A stretch of DNA of 64,000 bases from positions 62,001-126,000 of IMG/VR virus record IMGVR_UViG_3300027770_000027. The stretch is one strand, 5' to 3'. Positions 1 to 27,566 of this stretch are shown here, in pieces. The translations under genes and the position numbers were made by a program. The notes beneath the pieces are model-generated. The model saw only the letters and a program-made list of their open reading frames with translations, did not search any database and had not been told where the DNA came from. Within the stretch, counting starts at the first letter, position 1; each line of letters starts with the position of its first letter.

Positions 1-60
1 TGTTCATCTTGTTTTTCATCATGTAATAATATTAACGGACGTTGGGGGGAACTGCAAGGA

Positions 61-333
61 CTACTTCCGAGCTCTGGCCTTCTTGAACTGAGCCCTCACC
101 TTTGCAAAGGTCTCGTCCTGCTCGGGCTCCGGGTAGAACCAGTTCCAGGTGTTGCGGACTCCCTTGACCAGGAGCTCGAGGAGGCACAGAGGGATGAGGA
201 TCGGGGAGAGCACCACGGTGAGCAGAGCGGTGACAACGATCGTGGTGATACAGGCGCTCGCTAGTGCGTTGATCGTGGACTGGTGGCGGAGGCGGAAAGC
301 GAAGGCTTCGGTGGGTGTCATGGTGTCTTTCAT
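61..333 (-). CDS. hypothetical membrane protein
   Basis: 90-aa ORF with a hydrophobic stretch, directly behind a TTCCCC promoter. Confidence 0.8.
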   Translation of the reverse strand: MKDTMTPTEAFAFRLRHQSTINALASACITTIVVTALLTVVLSPILIPLCLLELLVKGVRNTWNWFYPEPEQDETFAKVRAQFKKARARK

Positions 334-375
334 CTTGTATATATCTTAGGTGAGGAGAGGGGGAACCGCACGGAC

Positions 376-468
376 TTAGTTGAGGTCGAAGAGGTAGATA
401 AAGGTCGCGCCGAGGCCTACGAGAAGGACGAAGTGAACTGTCACGGCTACTACTTGGAACGTTGTCAT
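376..468 (-). CDS. 30-aa single-TM microprotein (MTTFQVVAVTVHFVLLVGLGATFIYLFDLN)
   Basis: Not in the ORF track. Starts 7 nt after the -10 box of a TTCCCC promoter and its stop abuts the next promoter. Confidence 0.75.
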   Translation of the reverse strand: MTTFQVVAVTVHFVLLVGLGATFIYLFDLN

Positions 469-500
469 TGTTAAGATATTAAAGGATGTACTGGGGAACC

Positions 501-695
501 TCAAGCGAAGACTTCGTGGGCGATCCCGGACTCTGGCTGCTCGTAGGACTCGATGAAGAACCTCTTAGAGTCCTTCCGTTGCCAGATCCACTCCTCCGCG
601 GACTTCCGATCGAAGAAGACTCCGATGAACTCATTGCCGCCGTTGGAGAAGGCTCCGGCTTCCTTGAACACGATATGGACTTGGGTCTTGGTCAT
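501..695 (-). CDS. small hypothetical protein, paralog of 734-898 and of the C-terminus of 16880-17218
   Basis: V(H/Y)IV...FIGVF...A pattern; own TTCCCC promoter. Confidence 0.8.
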   Translation of the reverse strand: MTKTQVHIVFKEAGAFSNGGNEFIGVFFDRKSAEEWIWQRKDSKRFFIESYEQPESGIAHEVFA

Positions 696-733
696 AGTTC
701 TATTATGGGTTAGGAACTGGGGAAGCTCAACGC

Positions 734-898
734 TTATCGTCCGAGAGCAGGCAGGGGCTTCTGAACAGTCACCCAGTGGAGGATCTCGGTCGGGACTCGG
801 AACACCTTAGCTGCCTGCTCTGCGTCCTCGCGCTTGGCGTAAGCTCCGAGGAAAGCCTGATTGTCTTCGCGAACGAGAATGTAAACGGTGTCTTTCAT
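734..898 (-). CDS. small hypothetical protein (start revised to MKDTVY)
   Basis: TTCCCC-N11-TAAGAT module places the start at 898. Confidence 0.75.
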   Translation of the reverse strand: MKDTVYILVREDNQAFLGAYAKREDAEQAAKVFRVPTEILHWVTVQKPLPALGR

Positions 899-930
899 TG
901 TTAATATCTTAGTGGATCTAACGGGGAAGC

Positions 931-1128
931 TCAAGCCTCAAGAGCGAGGACGTTGAACGGGACCTGGACTACCTGATTGCTGGGAAGTTCCACGCAGACA
1001 TCCAGCTCGGTGTTCTTCTCCAGGCGAGCGGCCACGGACATGGCCTGCCAGAGAGTCTCGTGGGATGTGTGGATCCGGTAGGGCTTGTTGGGGTAGAGAG
1101 GGGAGCGAGTGAGGACGTTGTAGGTCAT
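931..1128 (-). CDS. hypothetical protein
   Basis: 65-aa ORF in a tightly packed run. Confidence 0.7.
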   Translation of the reverse strand: MTYNVLTRSPLYPNKPYRIHTSHETLWQAMSVAARLEKNTELDVCVELPSNQVVQVPFNVLALEA

Positions 1129-1140
1129 GGTGATTGGGAA

Positions 1141-1242
1141 TTAGAGGTTATGCTTAGCTGCTACGTAGGTCACGAAGACTGCGGCGACTCCGGTGAGAGC
1201 GACTCCGGTGAACATCAGGATGGGAAGGACTGTTTCAATCAT
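1141..1242 (-). CDS. 33-aa single-TM microprotein (MIETVLPILMFTGVALTGVAAVFVTYVAAKHNL)
   Basis: Not in the track; leaderless ATG 6 nt after TAAGAT. Confidence 0.75.
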   Translation of the reverse strand: MIETVLPILMFTGVALTGVAAVFVTYVAAKHNL

Positions 1243-1281
1243 GTAATAATCTTAGCACATGACTGGGGGAACCTCCCGCCC

Positions 1282-1530
1282 TCAATAGTGCCGTGTCTTT
1301 GACTCTGTCTTGACTCGCTCATACTCTGCTCGCGTCCTCTCGTCTTCCAAAGAGAGGAGTAGCCGGTGGAGTTGGCCTGCAGCAACCTGATAGGCCTTCT
1401 CGGCGGTGTAGGCTTCCCGGCGAAGGGCATTGACGGCATCCAGCTTATCTGTCTTGTGAGCAGAGAGACTGTCCAGGAGGTCGAGTTGTTGGCGGACGCC
1501 GGGGTTATTGAGGATGTCTTGGTTATTCAT
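1282..1530 (-). CDS. hypothetical coiled-coil protein
   Basis: 82-aa helical ORF. Confidence 0.7.
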   Translation of the reverse strand: MNNQDILNNPGVRQQLDLLDSLSAHKTDKLDAVNALRREAYTAEKAYQVAAGQLHRLLLSLEDERTRAEYERVKTESKTRHY

Positions 1531-1554
1531 AGATTTATTGGTTGTGGGGAAAGA

Positions 1555-1731
1555 TTAGTGGCGGTTCCGGGGATTGATTCCCTTCCCGGCGTTCTCCTGC
1601 CGGTGGATGATGACCCCGGCGATCACGAAGAGGACAATCACAGGCCAGAAGTTCACGGCGAGCTTGAGGAAGACCTGGCCAATGAGGGAAAGCTTGTCTG
1701 TGAGGGTCATGTCGAAGTGTTCTTGAATCAT
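1555..1731 (-). CDS. 58-aa membrane protein (MIQEHFDMTLTDKL...)
   Basis: Not in the track; TTCCCA-N11-CATAAT-N6-ATG; one TM segment. Confidence 0.75.
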   Translation of the reverse strand: MIQEHFDMTLTDKLSLIGQVFLKLAVNFWPVIVLFVIAGVIIHRQENAGKGINPRNRH

Positions 1732-1788
1732 GTTTCTATTATGGCTGGGAATGCTGGGAAGGGAACGGCTGACTTTAACATTGAGGTC

Positions 1789-1971
1789 CTACTTGCACAG
1801 GCAGTAGACTCCGAAGAGGGCCAGCCCTCCCACGATGAGGCCGTGGTTCCCCAGGAACGCGAGACATAGGGTTCCCAGGGCGGTTCCGGCCATCGCCATT
1901 CCTAGGAAGGCGGACGGGCATAGGAACCAGAGGGCTGCGAGAACGGCGAGGAACATCATTACTTTCATCAT
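1789..1971 (-). CDS. 60-aa hydrophobic membrane protein
   Basis: Almost entirely hydrophobic; MMK leaderless start. Confidence 0.8.
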   Translation of the reverse strand: MMKVMMFLAVLAALWFLCPSAFLGMAMAGTALGTLCLAFLGNHGLIVGGLALFGVYCLCK

Positions 1972-2032
1972 GTATATATCTTACAGGACTTGAGGGGGAA
2001 GGGAACGCCGGAACGGGAAGGAAGGGAAGCGG

Positions 2033-2057
2033 GGGAGCCCCCACACAGGAGCTCCCC
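2033..2057 (-). terminator. GC-rich hairpin after 2072-2719 (weak U-tract)
   Basis: GGGAGCTCC...GGGGCTCCC stem on the minus strand. Confidence 0.4.
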
Positions 2058-2071
2058 TATGATGAAAGTGA

Positions 2072-2719
2072 TTAGGCTTTGCGCCGGGGGCCTTTGGTTC
2101 CCTTCCGGGTATCCTCAGGCTTGCGCTTCATGTCCTTGGAGTTGCAGAGACAGAACTCAGACAGAGGACATTGGGAACAACCAGCGTCTAGGAAGATATC
2201 GGGGCGCTGGCAGACCCCACGCGTGAGTTCTTCCACGGCTTCTCTAGACTTGAAATCAATCTTAACACCCTTGGCATCAGGATTAAACTTTGGGAGCTCA
2301 GCACGGACCTTGTCTTTACGGTCCTCCATATCTTCTCGAGTAAGGTAGTCCTCCTTAACATTACTACCCACCGTGATATTATCCTCTTTGGCTTTACGGA
2401 CCTTCGGAACTTTAACTTGTTTCGCAGGAGTACTAGCCTTACGACAATCTCCACATACGAACTTAGTAAGAAGTAATTCAATGGTGTTATACTCCGGCTT
2501 AGCCAACTGGCGTTTCAGGTTATCCCCGAACATGGAGGTCTGCTTATTCTTACAGCAAGAGCAATTGATCTTCTGTACCGGGAGGCGATCATTCTCCTTA
2601 TAGAAGGCAACCCACTCCTTAAGGTTCTTGAACTGATCGCCTCCCGAGGCCTGCTTGATGGCCACCTTAGCGGCTTTGGCTGCTGCACCGAACTTCTTAC
2701 GATATACTTTCTTCATCAT
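2072..2719 (-). CDS. Lys-rich protein with several Cys clusters (putative Zn-binding nucleic-acid-binding early protein)
   Basis: CSCC, CGDC and CQRP...CSQC...CLC motifs; basic termini. Confidence 0.8.
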   Translation of the reverse strand: MMKKVYRKKFGAAAKAAKVAIKQASGGDQFKNLKEWVAFYKENDRLPVQKINCSCCKNKQTSMFGDNLKRQLAKPEYNTIELLLTKFVCGDCRKASTPAKQVKVPKVRKAKEDNITVGSNVKEDYLTREDMEDRKDKVRAELPKFNPDAKGVKIDFKSREAVEELTRGVCQRPDIFLDAGCSQCPLSEFCLCNSKDMKRKPEDTRKGTKGPRRKA

Positions 2720-2757
2720 GTAATAATCTTAGCTGAAGTTGTGGGGAAGGGACCGAC

Positions 2758-2991
2758 TTACTTGCCGCAGTAGGCTTCGTCGTACACCGCGTTCATCTCC
2801 TGAGCCGCTTCGAGGCCTTCGCTATATCCTTTGTCTCGGCCAGCTTCAAAGGTCTTCTTCACCAGGGTGACCAGGGAACCGATGTACACGTCCCGGAAGT
2901 CCAGGCGATCCATATTACGGACCGCAATCGTTTCGATCTCGGTGTCGATGTGCTTCTGCAGGAGGGAAAGGATTTCGTCGTTCTTCATCAT
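2758..2991 (-). CDS. DUF6900-like small protein
   Basis: IETIAVRNMDRLDFRDV...FEAG matches the recalled family pattern TLETRNSDxLDFHDV. Confidence 0.65.
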   Translation of the reverse strand: MMKNDEILSLLQKHIDTEIETIAVRNMDRLDFRDVYIGSLVTLVKKTFEAGRDKGYSEGLEAAQEMNAVYDEAYCGK

Positions 2992-3029
2992 GTAATAATC
3001 TTAGCTGAAGTTGTGGGGAAGCTCCCGGC

Positions 3030-3212
3030 TTATCGGCCGAGGTTGTTTAGCTTGCGAATGGCGGCGTGAACTGCCCTAAGCTGGTTTACCAGGGGGTCTC
3101 CCAGACCGACGAGGCCTCCGTCTAGGACGATCTCGTCGATCTGCTTGTTGATGTCCCTGGACCGGTCCTTAAGTGCCGCCAGGGTCTTTGCTCTCTTCAT
3201 CTTGCTCATCAT
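3030..3212 (-). CDS. hypothetical protein (start revised to MMSKMK)
   Basis: TTCCCC-N11-TATGAT-N6-ATGATG. Confidence 0.75.
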   Translation of the reverse strand: MMSKMKRAKTLAALKDRSRDINKQIDEIVLDGGLVGLGDPLVNQLRAVHAAIRKLNNLGR

Positions 3213-3265
3213 GTAATAATCATAGAGCAGAATATGGGGAAGCGCAAGCGCGAATTTGCGTCTCC

Positions 3266-5788: not shown

Positions 5789-6016
5789 CTAGTCAACAAG
5801 ATCCACTTGAATGCTAATCCCGTTGAATGTGGCTCCGATTCCTTTGTATTGGAATCGATCATCTGCAATACACTTCAAGGCTTCTTCCACTGCTCCAGCC
5901 GTACGAAGATCAACCGTATCATGTAGTTTACTATACGTACAATTCACCATCATACGACCATCTACACCCCAGGTCCGAACGATCCGCAGCTTCTGTTTCG
6001 ATTTGATCTTCATCAT
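5789..6016 (-). CDS. hypothetical protein (start revised to MMKIK)
   Basis: TTCCCC promoter with leaderless ATGATG. Confidence 0.75.
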   Translation of the reverse strand: MMKIKSKQKLRIVRTWGVDGRMMVNCTYSKLHDTVDLRTAGAVEEALKCIADDRFQYKGIGATFNGISIQVDLVD

Positions 6017-6035
6017 GTATATATTATGTAGGAGG

Positions 6036-6257
6036 TTAGGGGGAAGGTCCACCTGGTTGTCGGCTTTCTAAGACCTCATGGGTTGCAACCTGGCGAATCA
6101 ATTCAATATGCCTATCTGGGTAATCATAACAAGTAAACTTGTAAGAGTTACGAGCAGGCTGCTCATCTTTGAATTCACCCCAACACCAGAACTCTCCATT
6201 GTTATCTCTATAGCCCACTAGATAGGTATATTGATTATCACCGGTTCTCATATCCAT
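6036..6257 (-). CDS. small paralogous-family protein
   Basis: YxxLVGYRD..W...F.DE..A...I.LIR pattern. Confidence 0.7.
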   Translation of the reverse strand: MDMRTGDNQYTYLVGYRDNNGEFWCWGEFKDEQPARNSYKFTCYDYPDRHIELIRQVATHEVLESRQPGGPSP

Positions 6258-6679
6258 TCAGACTTAATAGTTACTTCTCTTTTGACGATTCGATATGTAT
6301 CACAATAAGGTCTACCAGAGTATTCGGCAATGTAATCATAGGCCTCTTTCAAGGTGTCTAGATTATACCTACGAACATTCCATTCATCTTTCTTTTCCCA
6401 GTCTTGAACTTCAATGTCATAAGAGATTCTAGTAGTGGTTTCCGCTGGCTTAGTATTGTTCTTACGAAAACAAAAAGACCTTTTATGTTCAATCACCTGA
6501 GCATCTAGGATCAAAGGGTCTTTGAAAAGTTCTTTAATGGCTATAGAAACATCATCTACATTATGATACTCTGAGGTCCTGTCGTAATCATCAGTTTGAG
6601 TATAGACCTCTACAGCATCTCGCTTTTTATTAGTCTTAGTGACCTCAATGGTATATACAGTTTTATTTAGGTATGCCAT
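6248..6679 (-). CDS. small paralogous-family protein, apparently two tandem domains
   Basis: YTIEV... and YDIEV...W...EA...YRIVKREV. Confidence 0.75.
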   Translation of the reverse strand: MAYLNKTVYTIEVTKTNKKRDAVEVYTQTDDYDRTSEYHNVDDVSIAIKELFKDPLILDAQVIEHKRSFCFRKNNTKPAETTTRISYDIEVQDWEKKDEWNVRRYNLDTLKEAYDYIAEYSGRPYCDTYRIVKREVTIKSEWI

Positions 6680-6685
6680 ATTAAT

Positions 6686-6886
6686 TTAATCCTTTGCTCT
6701 CGCACCATATATGGTATCATATCCACTATCATATCCAATCTGATAACCAGCTTCGAATCCTTCATTCAAAGCTTCCTTAGCAATCTGCCTGAATAGCTCT
6801 CGATGGTGCTCATAAGACATAGCTTTGTGTTTAGTCTCTAGTACTTTGTTAATGATCTTGTCAATGGCTTCGTATTCTTCTTCCAT
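6686..6886 (-). CDS. hypothetical protein
   Basis: GFEAGYQIGYDSGY repeats. Confidence 0.7.
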   Translation of the reverse strand: MEEEYEAIDKIINKVLETKHKAMSYEHHRELFRQIAKEALNEGFEAGYQIGYDSGYDTIYGARAKD

Positions 6887-6887
6887 A

Positions 6888-7106
6888 TTAGTAAGGGTAA
6901 CTTGATTCTACTCCATCTTGACGCCAAAAGCTAGCTAATTCATCAAAGAAGTCTTGTTCTTTGTAACTGGTATCCCAATAGAATTCAGCACCATAAGGAC
7001 TTTTGCCTTTAATGATCCACTTTTCTAATGAAGTGTAGTATTGTACCTCAAAAGTATAAGCTGCGGCAACATGCAATAAGGTTTGGGAAGGAGGATTGGA
7101 GGTCAT
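6888..7106 (-). CDS. hypothetical protein
   Basis: ORF track. Confidence 0.65.
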   Translation of the reverse strand: MTSNPPSQTLLHVAAAYTFEVQYYTSLEKWIIKGKSPYGAEFYWDTSYKEQDFFDELASFWRQDGVESSYPY

Positions 7107-7150
7107 AATAGAATAAACAGAGAGGAAAGACCTGTATTAACACACTTGTA

Positions 7151-7477
7151 TTAGTGGTTCAATTCCAAGCTATCAACAACGTCTTGGATGGTTTCATAAT
7201 CTTCTTCGGAGATCTCATTCTTAAAATGGGTCTTAGCGATCTCTACCCAATTAACCGCATTGAGATAATCTCCAACAGCTTGATACGCCAAAGACCCCTG
7301 TTTAAGGTCTGCGAACTCCAACTCTTCCACTAGCTGCTCAAAGGCATCTGCCATATGCTCTACATCATCGAACTCCTGGTCTTCTGCCATTGACGCGAAG
7401 ATCTCCTCATACATGAGGTTGATGTTCCAGGTCTGCTTGTTCGTCCAGCCGTTGTATGTCGTATCGTTTCTCATCAT
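7151..7477 (-). CDS. conserved phage hypothetical protein (YNGWTN..TW motif)
   Basis: Motif common in phage and mobile-element proteins; TTCCCC promoter. Confidence 0.8.
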   Translation of the reverse strand: MMRNDTTYNGWTNKQTWNINLMYEEIFASMAEDQEFDDVEHMADAFEQLVEELEFADLKQGSLAYQAVGDYLNAVNWVEIAKTHFKNEISEEDYETIQDVVDSLELNH

Positions 7478-7515
7478 GTAAATATCTTATAGGAAGAAAG
7501 GGGGAACCACACGCC

Positions 7516-7926
7516 TTACAGACTGCCGACATGCAGGACCTTGTCATCCTGGGAAAATTCAAAGCCGTGGCTGTAGTAACCGTTATGTACATTCCATAGA
7601 TGAAGGAATTGTTCCTGATCTCCCTTAATCATACGAAAGACTGCCCGGTTGTCATCATCGTAGTAATCATCAATGCTAGTCGAAAGCTTTTCAAAGAACG
7701 CAGGATCAAAGGTCCAACCTTCGAGTAGTTGATTAACATCTTTACCATCCTGGATGGTGTCATTAAACAAATGATCGTGAAGGTCGGTAGTAACCTTGTC
7801 ACTAACATACCAACCAAAGCTCTCACAGCAGCTAGCTGAGAAATCATATCCGACAAGAACATTGTTCTCGTCTACGAAGTTAATCTTAGAACCCCAGCTA
7901 TCAGGATCTGCATGGAAATAACGCAT
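7516..7926 (-). CDS. conserved phage hypothetical protein (CCE...HNGYYSH motif)
   Basis: Motif recognition. Confidence 0.8.
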   Translation of the reverse strand: MRYFHADPDSWGSKINFVDENNVLVGYDFSASCCESFGWYVSDKVTTDLHDHLFNDTIQDGKDVNQLLEGWTFDPAFFEKLSTSIDDYYDDDNRAVFRMIKGDQEQFLHLWNVHNGYYSHGFEFSQDDKVLHVGSL

Positions 7927-7974
7927 AGTTGTATTGTATAGAGGTCGTGTGGTTGTATTGTTTAGAGGTAAGAC

Positions 7975-8340
7975 TTACCGCTCCATGGAAGACATGAAAC
8001 GATCTTCGAAATCATTCATGTAGAGGAACTCTGGGTCATTCACCGGAGCATCAAAGGTTGGTTCAAACTTCCCGGCACTTTCAGGAAACTTAGCTTCTCC
8101 TGCCACTTTCCCGTTAATCAAGATACGGACACAACGAAGCTCGTTCGGGTGGCAGACATATTGCCGGGAGTTATTAACAACCCAATCCATCTCCCGCTTG
8201 AGGTCTTGCAGAGCACTGGCTCGGGTCATTCCCACGACCGAATAGATCGTATTCCAATGAATTACTCCAGTATCAGTGAAGACCTGGATCTGAAGGCGAC
8301 CGACGACTGTTTCTTCTGCGAATGATTGTGTTTCCATCAT
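7975..8340 (-). CDS. hypothetical protein
   Basis: Leaderless MM start behind a TTCCCC promoter. Confidence 0.8.
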   Translation of the reverse strand: MMETQSFAEETVVGRLQIQVFTDTGVIHWNTIYSVVGMTRASALQDLKREMDWVVNNSRQYVCHPNELRCVRILINGKVAGEAKFPESAGKFEPTFDAPVNDPEFLYMNDFEDRFMSSMER

Positions 8341-8382
8341 GTATATATCTTAGACGAGGTTGTGGGGAACCGCAAGGACTAC

Positions 8383-8601
8383 TTAAAGGACCACCTGCTC
8401 TGGCTCACTGGCCTGACACACTAGCTCGAGCACCTCCTCCATGTAGGAGACTCCTGCGGCGAAGTTCGCGCGGCCACGGTTGTCGGAGACGTACTGGAGG
8501 ATCACCTGGACTGCTTCAGCCACTGAGACGTGGTTGGCCTTGAGGATCTCTGCGGCGGCGGACTTGGCTGCTTCGGACTGGATGTATTCGTTCTTCATCA
8601 T
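8383..8601 (-). CDS. hypothetical protein
   Basis: MMKN start, own promoter, GC-rich codons. Confidence 0.8.
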   Translation of the reverse strand: MMKNEYIQSEAAKSAAAEILKANHVSVAEAVQVILQYVSDNRGRANFAAGVSYMEEVLELVCQASEPEQVVL

Positions 8602-8643
8602 GTTTATATCTTAGAGGAGGTAATGGGGAAACTCAACGCTTAC

Positions 8644-8904
8644 TTAGATGCCCTGGGCAAGTACGGCGTCCTCTGGGCTCTGCCAGTAGGTCTTCGAGAA
8701 GGTCACTATCCAGGTGTCTCTGTTCACTCGAAGGGCTTTGAACACCAGAGCATTGTCCTCATTGTCCAGCACCGTGATGGCATCCACTGAAGAGGGATGG
8801 AAGACGCGGACCTTGTTGACGATGTACTGGACGCGCTTGGCTTCCTTGGCGAGGACGTTGACTTGCTTCGTGCTGAGGACTCGTGTGTATGTGTTCTTCA
8901 TCAT
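8644..8904 (-). CDS. hypothetical protein
   Basis: MMKN start, own promoter. Confidence 0.8.
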   Translation of the reverse strand: MMKNTYTRVLSTKQVNVLAKEAKRVQYIVNKVRVFHPSSVDAITVLDNEDNALVFKALRVNRDTWIVTFSKTYWQSPEDAVLAQGI

Positions 8905-8913
8905 GTATATATC

Positions 8914-9135
8914 TTAGACGAGGTTGTGGGGAAACGCAAGGGCTTCTGCCTTCTCAAGTGCTTCTTCTCCATCCATTCCCAGCTTCTCGATCTGCTCGAT
9001 CGTGGCGTTGGCTGCTTCACAAGCGGACCTGCGGAGCTTTGCGGCTTCATCCCCCCAAACACCGTCCAGGTCGAAAGCCTGTTGGAGTTGCAAGGTGAGC
9101 TGCTCAAGGAGAATGTCGATCGTGTTTTTCATCAT
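8914..9135 (-). CDS. hypothetical protein
   Basis: MMKN start; C-terminus runs through the next promoter. Confidence 0.8.
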   Translation of the reverse strand: MMKNTIDILLEQLTLQLQQAFDLDGVWGDEAAKLRRSACEAANATIEQIEKLGMDGEEALEKAEALAFPHNLV

Positions 9136-9144
9136 GTAATAATC

Positions 9145-9345
9145 TTAGTCGATCTTAGGGGGAACCGCACGAGCATTGTGCTGCTGGGTCTCATAGCTCC
9201 ACATGACTTGTTCCCAATACTTGATTTCTAATTCCAGGTGTCTAGGAATTAAACATAAGTCTATCTTTCTTCTAGGAAGTTGATCATCTAATTCATTCAA
9301 TCGAGCAATGGCTTGTTCGTAATGTTCTCGAGATATAGGAATCAT
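9145..9345 (-). CDS. hypothetical protein
   Basis: ATGA overlap with the upstream gene. Confidence 0.7.
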   Translation of the reverse strand: MIPISREHYEQAIARLNELDDQLPRRKIDLCLIPRHLELEIKYWEQVMWSYETQQHNARAVPPKID

Positions 9346-9716
9346 TTGCTTTGTAACAATGCTACTCTTTCAGGAACTTCTAGTAACCAGGTTAATCTAA
9401 ACTCACCACCAAATCGATCGGAGATGTAATTTAAGCTACCTTCAATTGAATCAATGGATTCGTAACCATAGGTCTCATCTCCTGTTCGACGATCTGGTTC
9501 GTATGGTGTTATGCTTTTGTATTTTTTGCAGGTTCTTATGTTTCTTTGTTCAAGATAAGACCGATACTTGATAATAACATTCTGATGTTTAATGATTCGT
9601 TCACAGATCTTTTCTAGGTTCCAGTGATAATAAAAGTCTTCAAAGACCTGGTTAGCAATAACTGATCGCCAGGTTTTGGCTTTCTTCTCTAGTCGCTTAA
9701 AGGTCTTGTTCTTCAT
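9342..9716 (-). CDS. hypothetical protein
   Basis: ORF track. Confidence 0.7.
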   Translation of the reverse strand: MKNKTFKRLEKKAKTWRSVIANQVFEDFYYHWNLEKICERIIKHQNVIIKYRSYLEQRNIRTCKKYKSITPYEPDRRTGDETYGYESIDSIEGSLNYISDRFGGEFRLTWLLEVPERVALLQSK

Positions 9717-9717
9717 A

Positions 9718-9981
9718 TTACTTCTCTACAATAGTAACGATGCCTTCTAATACACCGTAAGTAGACTTCTCAGTATACTTGTAAGTGTCTGGTTGTTCTC
9801 CTTCTTTACGTACTCGTGTTAGAATCCAAAGGTCTGTTTGTTTCCAGGAGCAATTGATAAGCTTCTGATCCTTTTCAAGTTCTACGGTCATATTACCACC
9901 AACTGCTCGAGTAAAATAGTTACAGGAAGAAAGAGAAAGAATGGAAACAAGGCCGATTACTTTAAGAATGTTATTGATCAT
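9718..9981 (-). CDS. putative lipoprotein
   Basis: Signal peptide with LSSC lipobox; GG.MTV.L...WK..LW.LTR pattern. Confidence 0.75.
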   Translation of the reverse strand: MINNILKVIGLVSILSLSSCNYFTRAVGGNMTVELEKDQKLINCSWKQTDLWILTRVRKEGEQPDTYKYTEKSTYGVLEGIVTIVEK

Positions 9982-10023
9982 ACGTTAATAATACATGCTG
10001 TGATGGGGAAGAGCAACGTGGTA

Positions 10024-10272
10024 TTAACGAGAAACTCGACTGGTCAATGCTGTCTCATACTTGAGAGCATTACGAACTTCTTCAGGAGTTCCCCCGGTTG
10101 TTGCCAGGGTAACCAAATGGCGTAGAGCTGAGGTAAGAACCCCAGTTGCATAGGGGTAATTGATTGCACCATCTCCTTTACGGCGAGCAGCGTCTTCTAC
10201 TTCATTCAGGTAGTTGCGAAGCAGTTCGTTGATCTCTGAGACGCTGACGGTGTTCTTCTTTCTTTTCATCAT
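10024..10272 (-). CDS. hypothetical protein
   Basis: MMK start, TTCCCC promoter. Confidence 0.8.
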   Translation of the reverse strand: MMKRKKNTVSVSEINELLRNYLNEVEDAARRKGDGAINYPYATGVLTSALRHLVTLATTGGTPEEVRNALKYETALTSRVSR

Positions 10273-10303
10273 GTAATAATCTTACATGATGATGGGGGGA
10301 ACG

Positions 10304-10849
10304 TCACTGTTGAACGCCGTAGAGACTCGCGAGCAAGGACTCGGCTTTATTCAAAGCACCTGGAATACTTGTCTTGTCTACTTTCAATTCTTTAGATGGC
10401 ATAATACCAAATGAATCATAAGCTCTGATGAGTATATGACTTGAGTTATGTATTAAAGTAACTGTGTTGGTAATGTCAGTTAATTGAGCAGTACGACCCT
10501 TGTTTGGATGTTCTGGATCTAATACCTTATGAGTGCTAAGAAAGATACGAGTCCAATCATAACCTTGTTTGCTTAAATCTTTAATCACTTGCGGGGCTTC
10601 CATCAATAGATCTTGAAGGTTTCCATTCTTTAGGTCTTTACTAATAGACTTCTCTCTAGACCAATCTTCTTCACCAAAAACCAAACCATGTATAGAACCA
10701 AAGAACTCTGCTCTAGTAGATAGGTATTGAAACATCTTTGCCAGGACTTCAGGGTCTCTATTAACCTTTGCCTTATTAACGCTCAAAGCATTGGACTCTA
10801 GGACCTTTGCGTAGGCCTGTTCTAATAAAATGGAGTCTTTGGTTCTCAT
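10304..10849 (-). CDS. putative internal virion protein with MRTKDSILLEQAY leader
   Basis: Shared N-terminal peptide; late operon. Confidence 0.8.
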   Translation of the reverse strand: MRTKDSILLEQAYAKVLESNALSVNKAKVNRDPEVLAKMFQYLSTRAEFFGSIHGLVFGEEDWSREKSISKDLKNGNLQDLLMEAPQVIKDLSKQGYDWTRIFLSTHKVLDPEHPNKGRTAQLTDITNTVTLIHNSSHILIRAYDSFGIMPSKELKVDKTSIPGALNKAESLLASLYGVQQ

Positions 10850-10853
10850 ATGA

Positions 10854-11408
10854 TTAACGTTTCATTCCACCGATTCTAAAGCTTTGTCCAGCTTTTGCAT
10901 GAACTTCTGCAGGGGAGTCTTCCAGGAAACGAACACTAACTGTGGTGCCTTGATTTACATTATAGTCCTGACCTTTAATGGTTAAAATTAAATTACCGTT
11001 CTTTGTGTAATCTTGATCTCCGGAAGATCTCTTAACATCCTGAATAACGCCTTGAGCAAATACTCCATCCTCTAATTCAAACTTTGTATGAGCAACACTA
11101 CCACCAGATCCAGGCACTGTAGCACTACCATCATCACGACCATAACCAGAGGTTTGTTTATGACCAGTGACTCTAGACAAAGACACTTCTTTACCAACCA
11201 GGGTCTTTAGTTTAGCAAAGGCATTATCCTTTTCAAAAGATGGGAGCATATTGAATCTAGGAATAAGATTATTAGCTTCGTCTTCAGATATAGGAGCTTG
11301 TTGATCCTTGAAATGCATTGCATCAATCTCTTTAGCTCTCCTGGAACTAATCCCTTCTTGGACAGTTTCATAGGCTTGCTCAAGTAAAATAGTGTCTTTA
11401 GTTCTCAT
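10854..11408 (-). CDS. putative internal virion protein with MRTKDTILLEQAY leader (start revised)
   Basis: ATAAATA 9 nt upstream of the ATG at 11408. Confidence 0.8.
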   Translation of the reverse strand: MRTKDTILLEQAYETVQEGISSRRAKEIDAMHFKDQQAPISEDEANNLIPRFNMLPSFEKDNAFAKLKTLVGKEVSLSRVTGHKQTSGYGRDDGSATVPGSGGSVAHTKFELEDGVFAQGVIQDVKRSSGDQDYTKNGNLILTIKGQDYNVNQGTTVSVRFLEDSPAEVHAKAGQSFRIGGMKR

Positions 11409-11419
11409 TGTTATATTAT

Positions 11420-11770
11420 TTATTCTCCTTGTTCGTCTTCTTCTGTAGGATGAGACATATAATCCCACTTATCCCAGCTACTCATTTCAGGTTCTTCTTC
11501 TTCATCTTGATCATTGCTTTGATCCTTAGCTTTAATGAGAGCGGCTAGTTGAACTGCTAACTTGGCAATCTCTGGGTCCATTACTCTTTGATGCCCGTAT
11601 TGACCCCAATGAGCTAGTTCATCCAATACAGCTTCCATACTATGAGGAAGAGTCCCACTTGGTTTATTTGGATTTGCTAGGATATCTTTAGCCTCTTTCT
11701 CTGGATTGAATTCCATGACAAGCTTATAAGCTTCATGTATATTGGTTAATTCTTTACTCGGGAGTCTCAT
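11420..11770 (-). CDS. putative internal virion protein (MRLPSKELTNIHEAYKLVME)
   Basis: ATAAATA upstream; variant leader; acidic tail. Confidence 0.75.
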   Translation of the reverse strand: MRLPSKELTNIHEAYKLVMEFNPEKEAKDILANPNKPSGTLPHSMEAVLDELAHWGQYGHQRVMDPEIAKLAVQLAALIKAKDQSNDQDEEEEPEMSSWDKWDYMSHPTEEDEQGE

Positions 11771-11832
11771 TTGTTTTTATTATTTATCCTCAAAGAGCAT
11801 CATAAACACAAACCAAAATAAGATTAAAGCAA

Positions 11833-12063
11833 TCATTTGTTGGCGTTGCATTTGTAATGTTCGTACAAAGCTTCTTCGATTTCTCTACGTTCTTTTCTAT
11901 TAAATTGACTAGTGACATCATCACATTCCCAGTTTTGAATCCTTACTGAATGTGGACAACCTTGTTGATCTAGATATTCAAATACGAATAGTCTGTAGTC
12001 ATCATATACAATTTCTGTGACTCGTTCAATGATAGCTCGAAGGGTTGATTTAACAATTTTCAT
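11833..12063 (-). CDS. hypothetical protein
   Basis: ORF track. Confidence 0.65.
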   Translation of the reverse strand: MKIVKSTLRAIIERVTEIVYDDYRLFVFEYLDQQGCPHSVRIQNWECDDVTSQFNRKERREIEEALYEHYKCNANK

Positions 12064-12182
12064 TTAAGCAAATAAGCAATAAGAATGGTGGCTGTGACTG
12101 CTCCTGTGAATGATGCTACAACTACTCCTAGAAACATAAGAGTATAGCGAAGGTATGGTTTGTCTGTATTAAACGTTTTCAT
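12060..12182 (-). CDS. 40-aa single-TM protein
   Basis: Not in the track; ATGA overlap with 11833-12063. Confidence 0.6.
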   Translation of the reverse strand: MKTFNTDKPYLRYTLMFLGVVVASFTGAVTATILIAYLLK

Positions 12183-12228
12183 TATTCCGGATAGTGGACT
12201 TCAACTACTTTATGTACTTTGGTTTGTT

Positions 12229-12579
12229 CTACCAATTGATGTCTTTATTTTCAACAATGCCGACAGGAGAACCATCTGTACGAAAGATGACAATCCGGAA
12301 ATCTTCCTTAGCTTTGCTCCAAGCTTCTAATTGGTCAAACTCTTTATTACCAAACATCATCAACGTATGGCCCCGACGCAATTCAGCTCGAAAAGTACTC
12401 AAAGCTACTGAAGGAATATTAGATGACAAAGCTATAAGAGTCTTACCCAGATCAATAAGATCTTCTGCAAATTCAGAGACATCATTATCTCCTTGAGTGT
12501 CATTCAAGAAATCCATCATGGCTTCCTGATACCGTGTGATCATGTCTTCTGCGTTAGCAATCAATGTGTTCTTCATCAT
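12229..12579 (-). CDS. hypothetical protein
   Basis: MMKN start, TTCCCC promoter. Confidence 0.8.
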   Translation of the reverse strand: MMKNTLIANAEDMITRYQEAMMDFLNDTQGDNDVSEFAEDLIDLGKTLIALSSNIPSVALSTFRAELRRGHTLMMFGNKEFDQLEAWSKAKEDFRIVIFRTDGSPVGIVENKDINW

Positions 12580-12617
12580 GTAAATATATTAGTTAAAGTT
12601 ATGGGGAACCTCAAGGC

Positions 12618-12938
12618 TTACTTGCAGAGAGCCTTGCGAATCGGATCTACTCCGGTCAGGCGAACCAACTGCCTCGCATACACCGGGACCTTCCTCATTA
12701 CGAGGGCTAGCTGCTTGGGAGTCAATCTCCCGTATTGCTGGAAGGCTTTGGCCATGCGAGTGAGGATGAAAGCATCACAGCAACGGAACCCCACTCCATT
12801 GTGCATCTCTGTGCGGTCCTTATCTTGCTCCTCATCAGTCTGCTCCTTGGCGATGCGGACCAAGGCTCGAACAGCCCATGCTTCATCGGTGGCGAGCTTG
12901 TTTTGGAGAGCGGCGATAACGTCTTCTTGTTTCATCAT
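12618..12938 (-). CDS. conserved phage hypothetical protein (NGVGF...DA..LT...LTPKQ)
   Basis: Motif recognition; own promoter. Confidence 0.8.
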   Translation of the reverse strand: MMKQEDVIAALQNKLATDEAWAVRALVRIAKEQTDEEQDKDRTEMHNGVGFRCCDAFILTRMAKAFQQYGRLTPKQLALVMRKVPVYARQLVRLTGVDPIRKALCK

Positions 12939-12976
12939 GTAAATATATTAGCAGAGGATGGAGGGAACCTCCCGCT

Positions 12977-13441
12977 CTATTCCAGTGTCACGAGACCTGG
13001 AGCGATGCGATACACGATACAACCGAGGACTTCGGTTCCCTGCTTCCAATGAGCTTCACAGCGGTAAACTCCTTCTTCTACAAGCTTATTACAAAACACG
13101 GTAATCTCTAAATCACGACCGGTCTTAACCTTAAAAGCATAAGCTCCTTCACCAGGAGATTCTACTCGAACGATACGAGTACGAACCTTAAAGCCTGCAT
13201 GCTTCTGAGGAATGGGGTTGCCGTTGATCATCGTGGGCAGAGAAAACTTCCCGGGAGTATCATAGGTGACCACTCCACTCTGCTCGCCGCCTACAACAAC
13301 CTCCGGAATGTTATTGCGGTTGGAAGGCGTAAACAAAGTCCCTCGATCAGCATGTGCAAGAGCGTAGCTGAGGACATAGATCACGTTGCGGTTGTGCTGC
13401 TTCTGATTGTTCTGCGTAGGCTTGAAGGTGTTTCTCATCAT
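12977..13441 (-). CDS. hypothetical protein
   Basis: MM start, own promoter. Confidence 0.8.
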   Translation of the reverse strand: MMRNTFKPTQNNQKQHNRNVIYVLSYALAHADRGTLFTPSNRNNIPEVVVGGEQSGVVTYDTPGKFSLPTMINGNPIPQKHAGFKVRTRIVRVESPGEGAYAFKVKTGRDLEITVFCNKLVEEGVYRCEAHWKQGTEVLGCIVYRIAPGLVTLE

Positions 13442-13453
13442 GTAAATATCTTA

Positions 13454-13882
13454 TCAGACCAAGTGGGGAACCTCACGCGCGATCTCAGCTTTCAGTTCAG
13501 CTTCGAACTTTTCGCTGTTAATTAGCCGAGAGAGCTCGTCCGCCTCTTCTGGGGTTACGAACATGTCGACCCAGAAATTTCTCCCGTAAGTGTTAAGTTC
13601 GTGTTTGACGATATATCCCTGAGAACAACCACAGGAACACCCAGCCTTGGAGGAGAACTTAATACTACAAGCATCCGGGAACAACTCCTTCAAAGCCTTC
13701 GAGTTTGCTTTACTAGCCAAGGCTTTGACCTTACCCCAGGTCTTACATTTGAAGGGGAGGTTGTAGATCTGGTTCTTATCAAACCAAGCATCCACTACCT
13801 TATCTAGGAAGGATTCAACATAGACAATGCTGTTCCCGATTTTGTTGCGCTGACTGGATTGGGTGATCGTTGCTTTCATCAT
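13454..13882 (-). CDS. hypothetical protein (FS.KAGCSCGCS.G motif)
   Basis: Cys motif seen in phage proteins; own promoter. Confidence 0.8.
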   Translation of the reverse strand: MMKATITQSSQRNKIGNSIVYVESFLDKVVDAWFDKNQIYNLPFKCKTWGKVKALASKANSKALKELFPDACSIKFSSKAGCSCGCSQGYIVKHELNTYGRNFWVDMFVTPEEADELSRLINSEKFEAELKAEIAREVPHLV

Positions 13883-13911
13883 GTAATAATCTTACATGAT
13901 GATGGGGGGAA

Positions 13912-14673
13912 CTACACGGCAGATTTGCTCAATTCAAACTCAACCTGGTAACTACTCCTGAAGACATCTAAATCCCATTGAGGTCCTAATTTGTTCTTTA
14001 GTTGTTGAGCTAATCTTTTGTATAAAGTAACTTTGCCGTGATCAGAAGACTTAGCTGAGAATCCAATGATGGTATACTTCTTAGAGTTCTTAGACAAATA
14101 TTCATTCACTATCTTCAACACAGTGGCCATAACTCTAAATGCTTTACCAGTGCCAGTCATGTCTGCGGTGCCTTGAATATTCTTATCCTCATCTGTATAA
14201 TGGAACATAATAGTTAACCTTTGAGGATATTCCGGATCTTCTAATGTCAGTACGGTGTATAAAACTTTTGGGTTATTAGGATCAGGGAAGAATATAAAAC
14301 CCCCATCCCTTTCAGACCATTGGTATGGATAGGGATTATCCATAGATTCTTCTACTACACTTTCAGGTACACAGTTAGGTACTTGTTTACCATTCTTGGT
14401 CTTAGTGCCTATTGGTTTATAACCATCCCAACAGGTGTTTTTCATTCTCTTTTTTTCTTCCAGATACTCTGAGAATGTAGGAATGGTTGCTTCTGTATGA
14501 GAATGATACTTGGCTAACCGTTTCTTTAACATCTTAACCCAACCAATGTTATTAGTACGTTTAGCCTCTTTCATATCCTTATGAGCTGCTGCAGCTTTGT
14601 GAGACCAGAACTGTTTTTTATCTGTGTTGGATTCTTTCTTGCCCGGCTTAGCTTTCTTGGATATATCACTCAT
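13912..14673 (-). CDS. modular late protein with CWDGY...KVPNCVP motif (start revised to MSDISK)
   Basis: ATAAATA upstream of 14673; internal IPTFSEYLEE and VVEES. Confidence 0.8.
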   Translation of the reverse strand: MSDISKKAKPGKKESNTDKKQFWSHKAAAAHKDMKEAKRTNNIGWVKMLKKRLAKYHSHTEATIPTFSEYLEEKKRMKNTCWDGYKPIGTKTKNGKQVPNCVPESVVEESMDNPYPYQWSERDGGFIFFPDPNNPKVLYTVLTLEDPEYPQRLTIMFHYTDEDKNIQGTADMTGTGKAFRVMATVLKIVNEYLSKNSKKYTIIGFSAKSSDHGKVTLYKRLAQQLKNKLGPQWDLDVFRSSYQVEFELSKSAV

Positions 14674-19066: not shown

Positions 19067-19107
19067 TTATACGCTAGATTGGATAAAATTAAGTTATACG
19101 GTAGATC

Positions 19108-19138
19108 GAATATTACTCTGTTTCCTGTGGAATGTCAA
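19108..19138 (-). promoter_or_regulatory. sigma70-type promoter TTGACA-TTCC..N17-TAATAT
   Basis: Near-identical copy at about 20589-20617 (TTGACA-N17-TAGTAT-N6-ATG). Confidence 0.75.
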
Positions 19139-19505
19139 GCTTCGTTTCAAAAATGTTTCCTACTACGTTAAAAAACTGATCATATTCAATTAGATCTTGA
19201 AATGTTTCAAATGCTTTATCTATTACAACTCCAAAAGAACCAAACTCTTTAAAATATTGAACTTCACCAACAAATTGCATACCATCATCTCGATAAGCAA
19301 ACTCTAACAAGTCACCTTCATAGATCTCTTTGCCATTCTTATCAACAAGCCCTGTGAATTGCTGAAAGACTGCATCCTTATAACCACCTCGTTCCCAATT
19401 ACCCAAGTAAACATGCAGTTCTCCTTCTTTAGGATATTCTAACATATCAAACTCACCATGACCTCCCCAATGCTTAACATAAACTCTATATTTTGGTGTT
19501 CTCAT
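19113..19505 (-). CDS. YopX family protein
   Basis: QFTGLVDKNGKEIYEGD...VVGNIFE. Confidence 0.9.
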   Translation of the reverse strand: MRTPKYRVYVKHWGGHGEFDMLEYPKEGELHVYLGNWERGGYKDAVFQQFTGLVDKNGKEIYEGDLLEFAYRDDGMQFVGEVQYFKEFGSFGVVIDKAFETFQDLIEYDQFFNVVGNIFETKLDIPQETE

Positions 19506-19536
19506 TTTTTATTCAGCGTATACTTGGATGCTCATG

Positions 19537-24862: not shown

Positions 24863-25078
24863 TTATCGAGTTAACTCTTTTTCGTCTTCGCAAAAGATAG
24901 ACTCCCATTCTTCAGCAGTGATACCAGACTTAATAAACTCTCTCTCACTTGGACTTAAGTTAGGAAATGCTACTTGGAGAAGAGCTCCATCCTCATATGC
25001 TTCTAACTGCTCTCGAGTGACATCAAGGTTTAGGATTCTTGGAATATGGCTGAGTTGGGATACACGTGCGATTAACAT
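24863..25078 (-). CDS. conserved phage hypothetical protein (Q.AFPNLS..EREFI.SGI...EW)
   Basis: Motif; TTCCCC promoter. Confidence 0.8.
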   Translation of the reverse strand: MLIARVSQLSHIPRILNLDVTREQLEAYEDGALLQVAFPNLSPSEREFIKSGITAEEWESIFCEDEKELTR

Positions 25079-25116
25079 AATTCAATACTAAGTCTAAGTA
25101 TGGGGAATCTCAACCT

Positions 25117-25764
25117 TTAAGATTTCGTGTTACGAGCGCTCTTCTTAGCGGCCGGTGCTAGGACCATGTCTTCTCGGAGATCGCCTGTTTTAAGCGCGGT
25201 TTTGCGCGATTTCTTTAGTAGAACTGGAGGCTCCAAGAGAGCGGCACGCTGCACAAACTCTCTCACCTCTTCATCTTGGATTGCCTTCCCTTCATGCACT
25301 ATAGAGACCACTTCGCGATAGATCTTCACGGCATGTCGCTCAAAGAATCGATCTGCTTCTTCCTTACCCAAAGCATCATACCAACACTGAGCCTGGGGAA
25401 ATTGAGGAGCGGCGTGAAAGATGCATCCATTATGGAAATTACCAATCCAACACAGAAGAAAGATACCACCCTTAATATCTTTGTCCTTACACATAAATTC
25501 AAAGAACACAGCTCTTTCCTCTGGAGCCTTGCCTACATAGCGATTAAGCTTTGTAATATATTCTCCATCTAGGAATACAATAGACCTGCCCTTAGATGTA
25601 ACGTATTTCTTTAGAACTGAAACGTTATCATCATTCATATAAGCCTTACGAATAGTGGGCCAAGCTACTTTATTCTTGCGCATAGCAAAGAACGGAGAAG
25701 AGGCATTACCCTGACGGTTCATTGAAACCTTCTTATTCTTACGAGGATCTTTAGTGCTTATCAT
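25117..25764 (-). CDS. hypothetical basic protein
   Basis: Own TTGCGG-TTCCCC promoter. Confidence 0.8.
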   Translation of the reverse strand: MISTKDPRKNKKVSMNRQGNASSPFFAMRKNKVAWPTIRKAYMNDDNVSVLKKYVTSKGRSIVFLDGEYITKLNRYVGKAPEERAVFFEFMCKDKDIKGGIFLLCWIGNFHNGCIFHAAPQFPQAQCWYDALGKEEADRFFERHAVKIYREVVSIVHEGKAIQDEEVREFVQRAALLEPPVLLKKSRKTALKTGDLREDMVLAPAAKKSARNTKS

Positions 25765-25802
25765 ATTTATATCTTAAAGGAAGACTGGGGGAACCGCAAG
25801 AC

Positions 25803-27562: not shown

Positions 27563-27566
27563 AAAA

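What the first reader, a model, noticed from the sequence alone, without database searches (positions are those of the whole stretch)
2720..2754. TTCCCC box at about -29 to -24: a candidate new promoter element replacing -35
Seen: TTCCCC sits a near-fixed 11 nt before the -10 hexamer. The hexamer in the -35 position varies from perfect TTGACA (near 19138 and 20617) through TTGCGG/TTGAGG to unrecognisable (GGTCCC here, GTGACC near 30030), so the box is better conserved than -35. Known: T4 middle promoters replace -35 with a MotA box near -30. Inference: a phage activator or an unusual host sigma reads TTCCCC. The motif could also identify the host lineage if it occurs in host promoters.
Basis: partly seen in the sequence, partly recalled or inferred. 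Interest (0 to 1): 0.7.

Follow-up and report, generated by a model that had tools for sequence, protein, structure and literature searches.

The report
TTCCCC box in phage early promoters
About forty promoters of an uncultivated freshwater T4-like phage carry an invariant TTCCCC right after a weak -35 and appear to start transcription on the ATG itself. Related phages keep the box, so it is very probably a real, undescribed promoter element, but what reads it is still unknown.

Summary
TTCCCC-N11-TANNNT occurs 33 times in the window against 3.4 expected. In the 227-kb phage genome I count about 50 such promoters, nearly all on the coding strand.

The geometry is fixed:
- a degenerate -35, with G at -33 in 47 of 50 sites and TTG in only 25;
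- TTCCCC at -29 to -24;
- an 11-nt C-rich spacer;
- a TAAGAT-like -10;
- 6 nt, then ATG, which implies leaderless mRNAs.

Two copies precede tRNA genes, so this is a promoter and not a translation signal. Orthologous promoters in phages about 60-78% identical in protein keep TTCCC while the -35, spacer and -10 drift. Sister phages without the box have near-consensus TTGAC(A/T) and AT-rich spacers.

Box-driven ORFs are GC-rich and avoid the codons read by the phage's own tRNAs, which suggests an early class. The genome has no MotA, AsiA or sigma region-4 domain. No phage gene co-varies with the box. Neither the 201 Cyanobacteriota genomes searched nor the one MAG carrying a relative's contig shows enrichment.

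Best reading: an auxiliary element of an early, leaderless, sigma-70-type promoter class that compensates for a weak -35. Whether host RNA polymerase or a phage factor reads it is unresolved. No transcription-start data exist.

The parts
2749..2754 (-). Hexamer at the -35 position of the promoter in the finding (GGTCCC, no match to TTG)
2743..2748 (-). TTCCCC box, -29 to -24
2726..2731 (-). -10 hexamer TAAGAT, -12 to -7
2717..2719 (-). ATG of a 215-aa ORF (2072-2719). Its A at 2719 is the predicted +1, which makes this a leaderless start.
   Evidence: Geometry. No transcription-start data.
22..3247 (-). Cluster 1: 11 box promoters. Each span runs from +1 to -35: 22-57, 336-371, 469-504, 695-730, 899-934, 1242-1277, 1731-1766, 1971-2006, 2719-2754, 2991-3026, 3212-3247.
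   Evidence: The promoters at 695 and 1731 have CATAAT as the -10. Those at 2719 and 2991 are identical copies.
6016..13917 (-). Cluster 2: 12 box promoters at 6016-6051, 7477-7512, 8340-8375, 8601-8636, 8904-8939, 9135-9170, 9981-10016, 10272-10307, 12579-12614, 12938-12973, 13441-13476, 13882-13917.
   Evidence: All lie upstream of small ORFs with no family match above the curated cut-off.
25078..31172 (-). Cluster 3: 9 box promoters at 25078-25113, 25764-25799, 26548-26583, 27862-27897, 29195-29230, 29323-29358, 29709-29744, 29995-30030, 31137-31172.
   Evidence: The promoter at 29195 drives the 303-aa helicase-like ATPase, and its orthologous promoters in L033 and L034 keep the box.
33827..37065 (-). 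Cluster 4: 5 box promoters at 33827-33862 (24 nt before tRNA-Leu), 34856-34891, 35075-35110 (before a non-coding, tRNA-like stretch and the tRNA array), 35317-35352, 37030-37065.
   Evidence: The two copies before RNA genes have no ATG at +1.
43547..47790 (.). Three dispersed box promoters: 43547-43582 (minus, RNA ligase gene), 44199-44234 (plus, 115-aa ORF), 47755-47790 (minus, 284-aa ORF).
19103..20616 (-). Two variant promoters, 19103-19138 and 20581-20616, with a perfect TTGACA followed by TTCCAC or TTCCAG and a shared AGGAAACAGA spacer.
   Evidence: Where the -35 is perfect, the box is imperfect.

Best explanation
TTCCCC at -29 to -24 is a functional third element of this phage's early-class, sigma-70-type, leaderless promoters.

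The holoenzyme of the unidentified host binds a TAAGAT-like -10 and a degenerate -35 that are 17 bp apart, and it starts on the A of the ATG. The invariant box just downstream of the -35 hexamer supplies recognition that the poor -35 lacks. I think the most likely route is contact with the polymerase itself, on the sigma region 4 / beta-prime zipper side of the spacer. The box marks the genes expressed first: GC-rich ORFs of unknown function, the tRNA arrays, and genes such as the gp41-type helicase and an RNA ligase.

Shown: the motif, its geometry, its conservation and its inverse relation to -35 quality.
Inferred: promoter activity, the start site, early timing, and what reads the box.
For: - Enrichment, strand bias and fixed spacing.
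- Sigma-70-type frame: TANNNT at -12 to -7, G at -33 in 47 of 50 sites, and 17 bp between the -35 and -10 hexamers.
- ATG exactly 6 nt after the -10 in 34 of 53 sites, and two copies in front of tRNA genes without an ATG.
- The box is invariant while the spacer at -23 to -13 carries little information.
- Box promoters also serve dispersed conserved genes on both strands: a gp41-type helicase at genome position 216,785, an RNA ligase, and an ATPase.
- Orthologous promoters in L033, L034, G004 and G010 keep TTCCC while the -35, spacer and -10 differ.
- The complete relatives G005, G006 and G007 lack the box and have TTGAC(A/T)-N17-TAYAAT with AT-rich spacers.
- Where this genome has a perfect TTGACA, the box is imperfect.
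- Box-driven ORFs have GC 0.457 against 0.364 for the genome and GC3 0.43 against 0.25. They avoid codons read by the phage tRNAs: TTA 0.11 vs 0.42, ATA 0.08 vs 0.36, CAA 0.43 vs 0.78, AAA 0.45 vs 0.75. ORFs behind box-less promoters have genome-typical GC. This fits expression before the phage tRNAs are made.
- No phage MotA, AsiA or sigma region 4, and no phage gene co-varies with the box.
Against: - There are no transcription-start or expression data. The one metatranscriptome run is held only as contigs, which break at the same repeats as the DNA contigs.
- No sequence-specific readout at -29 to -24 is known for bacterial RNA polymerase. The known Z-element lies at -24 to -18 (PMC3173786).
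- Close relatives do without the box.
- There is no enrichment in the MAG that holds a relative's contig, nor in 201 Cyanobacteriota genomes. The true host was not tested.
- Each phage's promoter cassettes have their own conserved spacer flavour, so part of the conservation is concerted evolution.
- GC-rich ORFs could reflect horizontal acquisition rather than early timing.
Confidence: 0.45

Rival explanations
1. The box is the binding site of a phage-encoded or virion-injected activator. This activator would be a functional analogue of T4 MotA, unrelated in sequence, that recruits polymerase to promoters with a poor -35 and so defines a temporal class.
For: - The geometry equals that of the Mot box: 11 nt to the -10 here, against 11-13 nt in T4.
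- The site is asymmetric, 5-6 bp long and all-or-none, with few near-matches.
- The -35 is weak and the -10 suboptimal: TATAAT occurs in only 2 of 50 sites.
- Box-less promoters with good -35 hexamers exist in the same genome and could drive an activator gene.
- In clade-B relatives TTCCC recurs at -18, 11 bp away and therefore on the same helix face.
Against: - No MotA, AsiA or sigma region-4 domain in the genome.
- Twelve genes are present in G004 but absent from G005, G006 and G007. The two best candidates, of 111 aa and 215 aa, also occur in contigs without box promoters.
- Codon usage suggests these genes are translated before phage products accumulate.
- The retained G at -33 and the 17-bp frame argue that sigma region 4 still binds.
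Confidence: 0.25
2. The box is conserved mainly because promoter-plus-ORF cassettes spread and homogenise by recombination, as PeSL cassettes do in RB49 and phi1. On this reading the box is hitch-hiking sequence or a recombination signal and not a transcription signal.
For: - Promoters are repeated upstream of small unannotated ORFs in a hyperplastic region. Some promoters are identical copies (2719 and 2991), and several share spacers.
- Each relative has its own cassette flavour.
- The box-driven ORFs differ in composition from the rest of the genome.
- The PeSL precedent is described in PMC2839356.
Against: - The box is invariant while the adjoining spacer varies.
- It is kept at orthologous promoters across phages about 60-78% identical in protein.
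- It also occurs at dispersed conserved genes on both strands.
- There is no stem-loop: mean folding energy is -11.7 against -10.3 for shuffles, and the box bases have a pairing probability of 0.36.
Confidence: 0.12
3. The box is an operator. A phage repressor made after the early phase binds TTCCCC between the -35 and -10 and shuts off the whole early class at once.
For: - The box sits inside the polymerase footprint, is invariant and is limited to one gene class.
- The phage lacks AsiA, the T4 tool for early shut-off.
Against: - It does not explain the inverse relation between the box and -35 quality.
- No co-varying DNA-binding gene was found.
Confidence: 0.08
4. The signal acts in RNA. In read-through transcripts from the upstream gene, the C-rich, G-poor stretch would serve in termination, processing or avoidance of internal initiation.
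For: - Genes are tightly packed, with no excess of predicted terminators (11 found against 11.4 expected).
- The non-template spacer is C-rich and G-poor in all these phages.
Against: - The position is fixed relative to the -10 and not to the upstream stop codon.
- A 6-nt invariant core with a variable remainder fits DNA recognition better than an RNA signal.
- The box also lies upstream of the first gene of transcription units and of the tRNA arrays.
Confidence: 0.05

Closest known systems
T4 MotA-dependent middle promoters (Mot box at -30 plus a sigma-70 -10)
   Same: A phage-specific box about 11-13 nt upstream of a TANNNT -10 in a T4-type phage. It goes with a poor or absent -35 and occurs before tRNA and replication genes (PMC1524935).
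   Different: The box sequence differs (TTCCCC, not TGCTTtA). MotA, AsiA and their domains are absent. G at -33 and the 17-bp frame are retained. Codon usage points to an early rather than a middle class.
Z-element, a spacer element read by the beta-prime zipper of core RNA polymerase
   Same: A basal element inside the spacer that can substitute for the -35 contact (PMC3173786).
   Different: The Z-element lies at -24 to -18, centred on -21, and is weakly defined. This box lies at -29 to -24 and is invariant. Only position -24 overlaps.
PeSL cassettes (promoter-early stem-loops) of RB49 and phi1
   Same: Dozens of near-identical early promoters upstream of small unannotated ORFs in hyperplastic regions of T4-type genomes, with signs of cassette duplication (PMC2839356).
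   Different: PeSLs have consensus sigma-70 hexamers, a GGGG...CCCC stem-loop and a Shine-Dalgarno site. Here there is no stem-loop, no Shine-Dalgarno site and a weak -35.
Leaderless-gene promoters: a -10 about 6-7 nt before the start codon, as in Actinobacteria, Deinococcus-Thermus and Thermus phage phiYS40 (from my own knowledge, not checked in the library)
   Same: TANNNT 6 nt before the ATG and no Shine-Dalgarno site.
   Different: None of those systems is described with a conserved element at -29 to -24. Here the T4-type late promoters are placed for leaderless starts as well.

Membership tests
Sigma-70-type (primary sigma) promoter | -10 hexamer TANNNT at -12 to -7 | tested here: met
   47 of 50 box promoters have TANNNT and 3 have CATAAT.
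Sigma-70-type (primary sigma) promoter | -35 hexamer resembling TTGACA, 17 +/- 1 bp upstream of the -10 | tested here: inconclusive
   The frame is exactly 17 bp and G at -33 occurs in 47 of 50 sites. TTG occurs in only 25 of 50, and the mean match to TTGACA is 3.06 of 6. A scan for E. coli-type promoters recovers only 2 of the box promoters in 1-14000.
Sigma-70-type (primary sigma) promoter | Transcripts start 6-8 nt downstream of the -10 | not testable with these tools
   The only RNA run is held as contigs.
T4 MotA/AsiA middle promoter | Mot box (a/t)(a/t)(a/t)TGCTTtA centred on -30 | tested here: not met
   The box is TTCCCC. Consensus taken from PMC1524935.
T4 MotA/AsiA middle promoter | Box lies 11-13 nt upstream of the -10 | tested here: met
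   11 nt in 34 of 39 sites.
T4 MotA/AsiA middle promoter | motA and asiA genes present in the phage | tested here: not met
   PF09158, PF09114 and PF09010 give no match at E <= 1 in the complete genome.
PeSL regulatory cassette | Early promoter repeated upstream of unannotated ORFs in hyperplastic regions | tested here: met
PeSL regulatory cassette | Stable stem-loop within or next to the promoter | tested here: not met
   Folding energy does not differ from shuffles, and the box bases are mostly unpaired.
Z-element | Located at -24 to -18 and acting through the beta-prime zipper | tested here: not met
   The position is -29 to -24. The zipper contact cannot be tested here.
Leaderless transcription unit | Start codon at the predicted +1 and no Shine-Dalgarno site | tested here: met
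   ATG is 6 nt after the -10 in 34 of 53 sites. Shine-Dalgarno-like strings occur upstream of 7% of genes against 10% at random positions.

The most novel reading that the evidence does not exclude
TTCCCC is a new basal promoter element read directly by the RNA polymerase holoenzyme of a still unidentified, GC-richer freshwater host. It would act at -29 to -24, and one helical turn downstream at -18 in a sister clade. It would substitute for the -35 hexamer in a clade of T4-like phages that express essentially all genes, early and late, as leaderless mRNAs.
Probability: 0.3. Interest if true: 0.75.

Novelty: new variant of a known kind. Interest (0 to 1): 0.55.

Why it matters
If the box is read by the transcription machinery, it adds a sequence-specific promoter contact in a part of the spacer (-29 to -24) where none is described. 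It would show how a T4-type phase that lacks MotA and AsiA still sets apart a promoter class.

The motif is also a practical marker. It identifies the early gene set, about 50 transcription units, in a large and uncultivated freshwater phage clade.

Together with the absence of Shine-Dalgarno sites, the motif narrows the search for the host.

Tried and rejected
- **RNA evidence.** The one metatranscriptome run (X2) holds 93-95% of the sampled words, but only as contigs that break at the same repeats as the DNA contigs. It gives no 5' ends.
- **Cultured relatives.** There is no nucleotide match in the phage collection. The capsid protein is only about 35% identical to cyanophage capsids, and two early ORFs have no match.
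- **Motif scans of IMG/VR.** Two strict patterns gave only the same phage plus single hits at about the number I estimate for chance. One 130-kb record that looked promising (G024) is not enriched.
- **Candidate readers of the box.**
  - The 111-aa protein (genome 47076-47411) and the 215-aa protein (window 25117-25764) are present in box-bearing genomes and absent from G005-G007. Their homologues also sit in contigs without box promoters, so I rejected them.
  - The 173-aa protein (genome 37088-37609) has no family, solved-structure or atlas lead.
  - I made no structure or complex prediction because no candidate survived.
- **Host.** A FolE2-bearing contig in a 'Melainabacteria' MAG is syntenic phage DNA, and the MAG is not enriched. 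In 201 Cyanobacteriota genomes no genome has more than 5 matches, and the controls are similar. The phage has no psbA.
- **Hairpin or terminator reading.** Rejected.
- **Archaeal TATA/BRE reading.** Rejected, because the box is not AT-rich and the phage encodes a gp55-type late sigma.

Full report
**What the window is.** The window is bases 62,001-126,000 of a 227,352-bp IMG/VR virus record rated 100% complete, with GC 36.4%. The DNA is held by freshwater and lake metagenome runs.

The record is a T4-type phage. It has:
- a gp23-family capsid protein that is only about 35% identical to the nearest cultured phages, which are cyanomyoviruses;
- a gp55-type late sigma;
- gp43, gp41, gp32, UvsX and clamp-loader homologues;
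- RNA ligases;
- at least 11 tRNA genes.

**The observation.** The site in the finding reads, on the minus strand: GGTCCC (2754-2749), TTCCCC (2748-2743), 11 nt, TAAGAT (2731-2726), 6 nt, ATG (2719-2717).

TTCCCC-N9-13-TANNNT occurs 33 times in the window against 3.4 expected, and 32 of these are on the minus strand. The whole genome has 50 minus-strand and 3 plus-strand copies of TTCCC-N12-TANNNT.

I also selected sites without using the box, taking TANNNT-N6-ATG followed by an ORF of at least 40 codons. Of 89 such sites, 33 carry TTCCC at -29, and no other pentamer exceeds 3. Scanning every offset puts TTCCC at -29 in 40 sites and at any other offset in at most 5. Among the TTCCCC sites that meet the -10 and ATG criteria, the spacing to the -10 is 11 nt in 34 of 39.

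I count 40 box promoters in the window and about 50 in the genome.

**Anatomy**.
- C at -36.
- A degenerate -35: TTG in 25 sites, GTG in 11, GGG in 8, with G at -33 in 47 of 50.
- The box: TTCCCC in 39 sites, TTCCCT in 5, TTCCCA in 4, TTCCCG in 2.
- A C-rich, G-poor spacer with a secondary preference for T at -17 and C at -16.
- A -10 that is TAAGAT in 22 sites and TAATAT in 11, but TATAAT in only 2.
- An AT-rich -6 to -3, then A and C at -2 and -1.
- ATG at +1, usually followed by ATGAA.

The -35 and -10 hexamers are exactly 17 bp apart, so the frame is that of a primary-sigma promoter and the box fills the first six spacer positions. A scan for E. coli-type promoters finds no excess in 1-14000 and recovers only two of the box promoters. 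By E. coli rules these are weak promoters.

**Why it is a promoter.**
- Every copy points the same way as the gene behind it.
- The ATG lies where +1 is expected, 6 nt after the -10 in 34 of 53 sites.
- Two copies, at 33827-33862 and 35075-35110, precede tRNA genes and have no ATG at +1. That excludes a purely translational signal.
- There is no stem-loop and no excess of terminators.

The start site itself is inferred. The only RNA run is stored as contigs and shows nothing about 5' ends.

The box class is present in:
- G002 (L033) and G003 (L034), which are about 70% identical in an early ATPase;
- G004, G010, G018 and G025.

In these phages the spacer and the -10 differ. G004 mostly uses TACACT with a short leader. 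G010 often has the box one base further downstream.

Five orthologous promoters, giving eight pairs in all, keep TTCCC in seven of the pairs while the -35, the spacer and the -10 have changed. The eighth pair reads ATCCCA.

Three complete relatives, G005, G006 and G007, lack the box at -29. They have TTGAC(A/T)-N17-TAYAAT-N6-ATG with AT-rich spacers, including at orthologous genes. On the capsid tree the box-bearing phages fall in one well-supported clade, which also contains the box-less G005 subclade.

In this genome the promoters with a perfect TTGACA have an imperfect box. So the box goes with a weak -35, within the genome and between genomes.

In the other clade (G006, G007), TTCCC recurs directly upstream of the -10, at -18. 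G007 has 5 such sites, where I estimate about 0.1 by chance from base composition. That is 11 bp from -29, so it lies on the same face of the helix.

**The gene class.** ORFs behind box promoters are GC-rich: 0.457 against a genome value of 0.364. The same holds in G004 (0.452 against 0.309) and G010 (0.461 against 0.350). ORFs behind box-less promoters have genome-typical GC.

Box-driven ORFs have GC3 of 0.43 against 0.25, and they avoid the codons that the phage's own tRNAs read. Box promoters also drive the tRNA arrays.

I infer that this is the class expressed first, on the host's tRNA pool, in a host that is GC-richer than the phage. Horizontal acquisition of the cassettes is the alternative explanation.

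**What reads the box.** The genome has no MotA, AsiA or sigma region-4 domain. Its only sigma-like gene is the gp55 homologue.

Twelve genes are present in G004 and absent from G005-G007. The two most attractive candidates fail, because their homologues lie in contigs whose promoters lack the box. The others gave no lead.

I could not test the true host. A relative's contig binned in a 'Melainabacteria' MAG is phage DNA, and that MAG is not enriched. None of 201 Cyanobacteriota genomes is enriched either.

I therefore favour direct reading by the host holoenzyme, or by something that enters with the DNA, at confidence 0.45. The early-class codon signature, the retained G at -33 and 17-bp frame, and the lack of any co-varying phage gene all fit that reading. 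A sequence-unrelated MotA analogue remains a serious rival at 0.25. It is supported by the Mot-box-like geometry, the all-or-none nature of the site and the suboptimal -10.

Cassette homogenisation of the PeSL type explains part of the pattern, namely the identical copies and the phage-specific spacer flavours. It does not explain why the box is invariant next to a variable spacer, nor why it is kept at orthologous and dispersed promoters.

**Comparison and novelty.** The literature searches found no description of TTCCCC as a promoter element. The nearest known things are:
- the T4 Mot box, which has the same geometry but a different sequence, and whose proteins are absent here;
- the Z-element, which also lies in the spacer and can substitute for the -35 but sits at -24 to -18;
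- PeSL cassettes, which share the genomic setting but have a stem-loop and a Shine-Dalgarno site.

I class the box as a new variant of a known kind: a phage-specific auxiliary promoter element. I rate its interest as moderate. It is a clean and conserved signal, but it comes from an uncultivated phage with no host and no expression data.

Noticed in passing
whole genome G000 and relatives G004, G005, G010; e.g. window 37962-39074, 57355-63856: The phage and its relatives have essentially no Shine-Dalgarno sites: 7% of genes have one upstream, against 10% at random positions. The T4-type late motif TAAATA sits mostly 5-6 nt before the ATG. Late genes therefore also look leaderless, and the clade appears to express nearly all genes this way.
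   Followed up: partly
window, +1 to +8 of most box promoters (e.g. 2712-2719, 8333-8340): Most early ORFs begin ATGATGAA (Met-Met-Lys/Asn). The same start recurs in the box-less relatives G006 and G007, so it may be a preferred 5' end for leaderless translation.
   Followed up: no
window 1-14000 and 25000-31000: Box-driven ORFs are far GC-richer than the genome, up to 0.60 against 0.364, and avoid the codons read by the phage tRNAs. The same holds in G004 and G010.
   Followed up: yes
window 34039-34109 and about 34905-34990, minus strand: There are extra tRNA-like sequences that ARAGORN did not call. Rfam scores 34039-34109 as a tRNA at 50 bits. A stretch ending in CCA after the box promoter at 35075-35110 looks like a long-arm tRNA with a GTA anticodon.
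   Followed up: partly
window 33806-33820 and 35052-35066, minus strand: The transcripts predicted from the two promoters before the tRNA arrays share the leader GATCTTTGATAG shortly after +1.
   Followed up: no
window 19103-19138 and 20581-20616, minus strand: Two promoters share a perfect TTGACA followed by TTCCA(C/G)AGGAAACAGA, which contains a TTCC-N3-GGAA inverted repeat. This is a distinct subclass and possibly an operator.
   Followed up: no
G006 and G007 (loci L152-L174), e.g. G007 220-224 kb: In the sister clade a TTCCC element sits directly upstream of the -10, at -18 to -14, in promoters with a good TTGACT -35. That is 11 bp downstream of its position in this phage.
   Followed up: partly
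G000 220920-221891 (locus L037 10921-11892), outside the window: A FolE2-type GTP cyclohydrolase I gene lies next to the gp32 gene. By tblastn it is 87% identical to the G004 copy. A relative's syntenic contig with an 83%-identical copy is binned in a 'Melainabacteria' MAG.
   Followed up: partly
window 3375-3726: The contigs of the RNA run leave this intergenic stretch uncovered, while the DNA run covers it with one contig. This is a hint that the run holds real transcripts, but it is too coarse to place their ends.
   Followed up: no
window 2719-3026: The promoters at 2719-2754 and 2991-3026 are identical from the box through the first ATGATGAAGAA. Contigs of both the DNA and the RNA run break here, so this repeat is a likely weak point of the assembly.
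   Followed up: no
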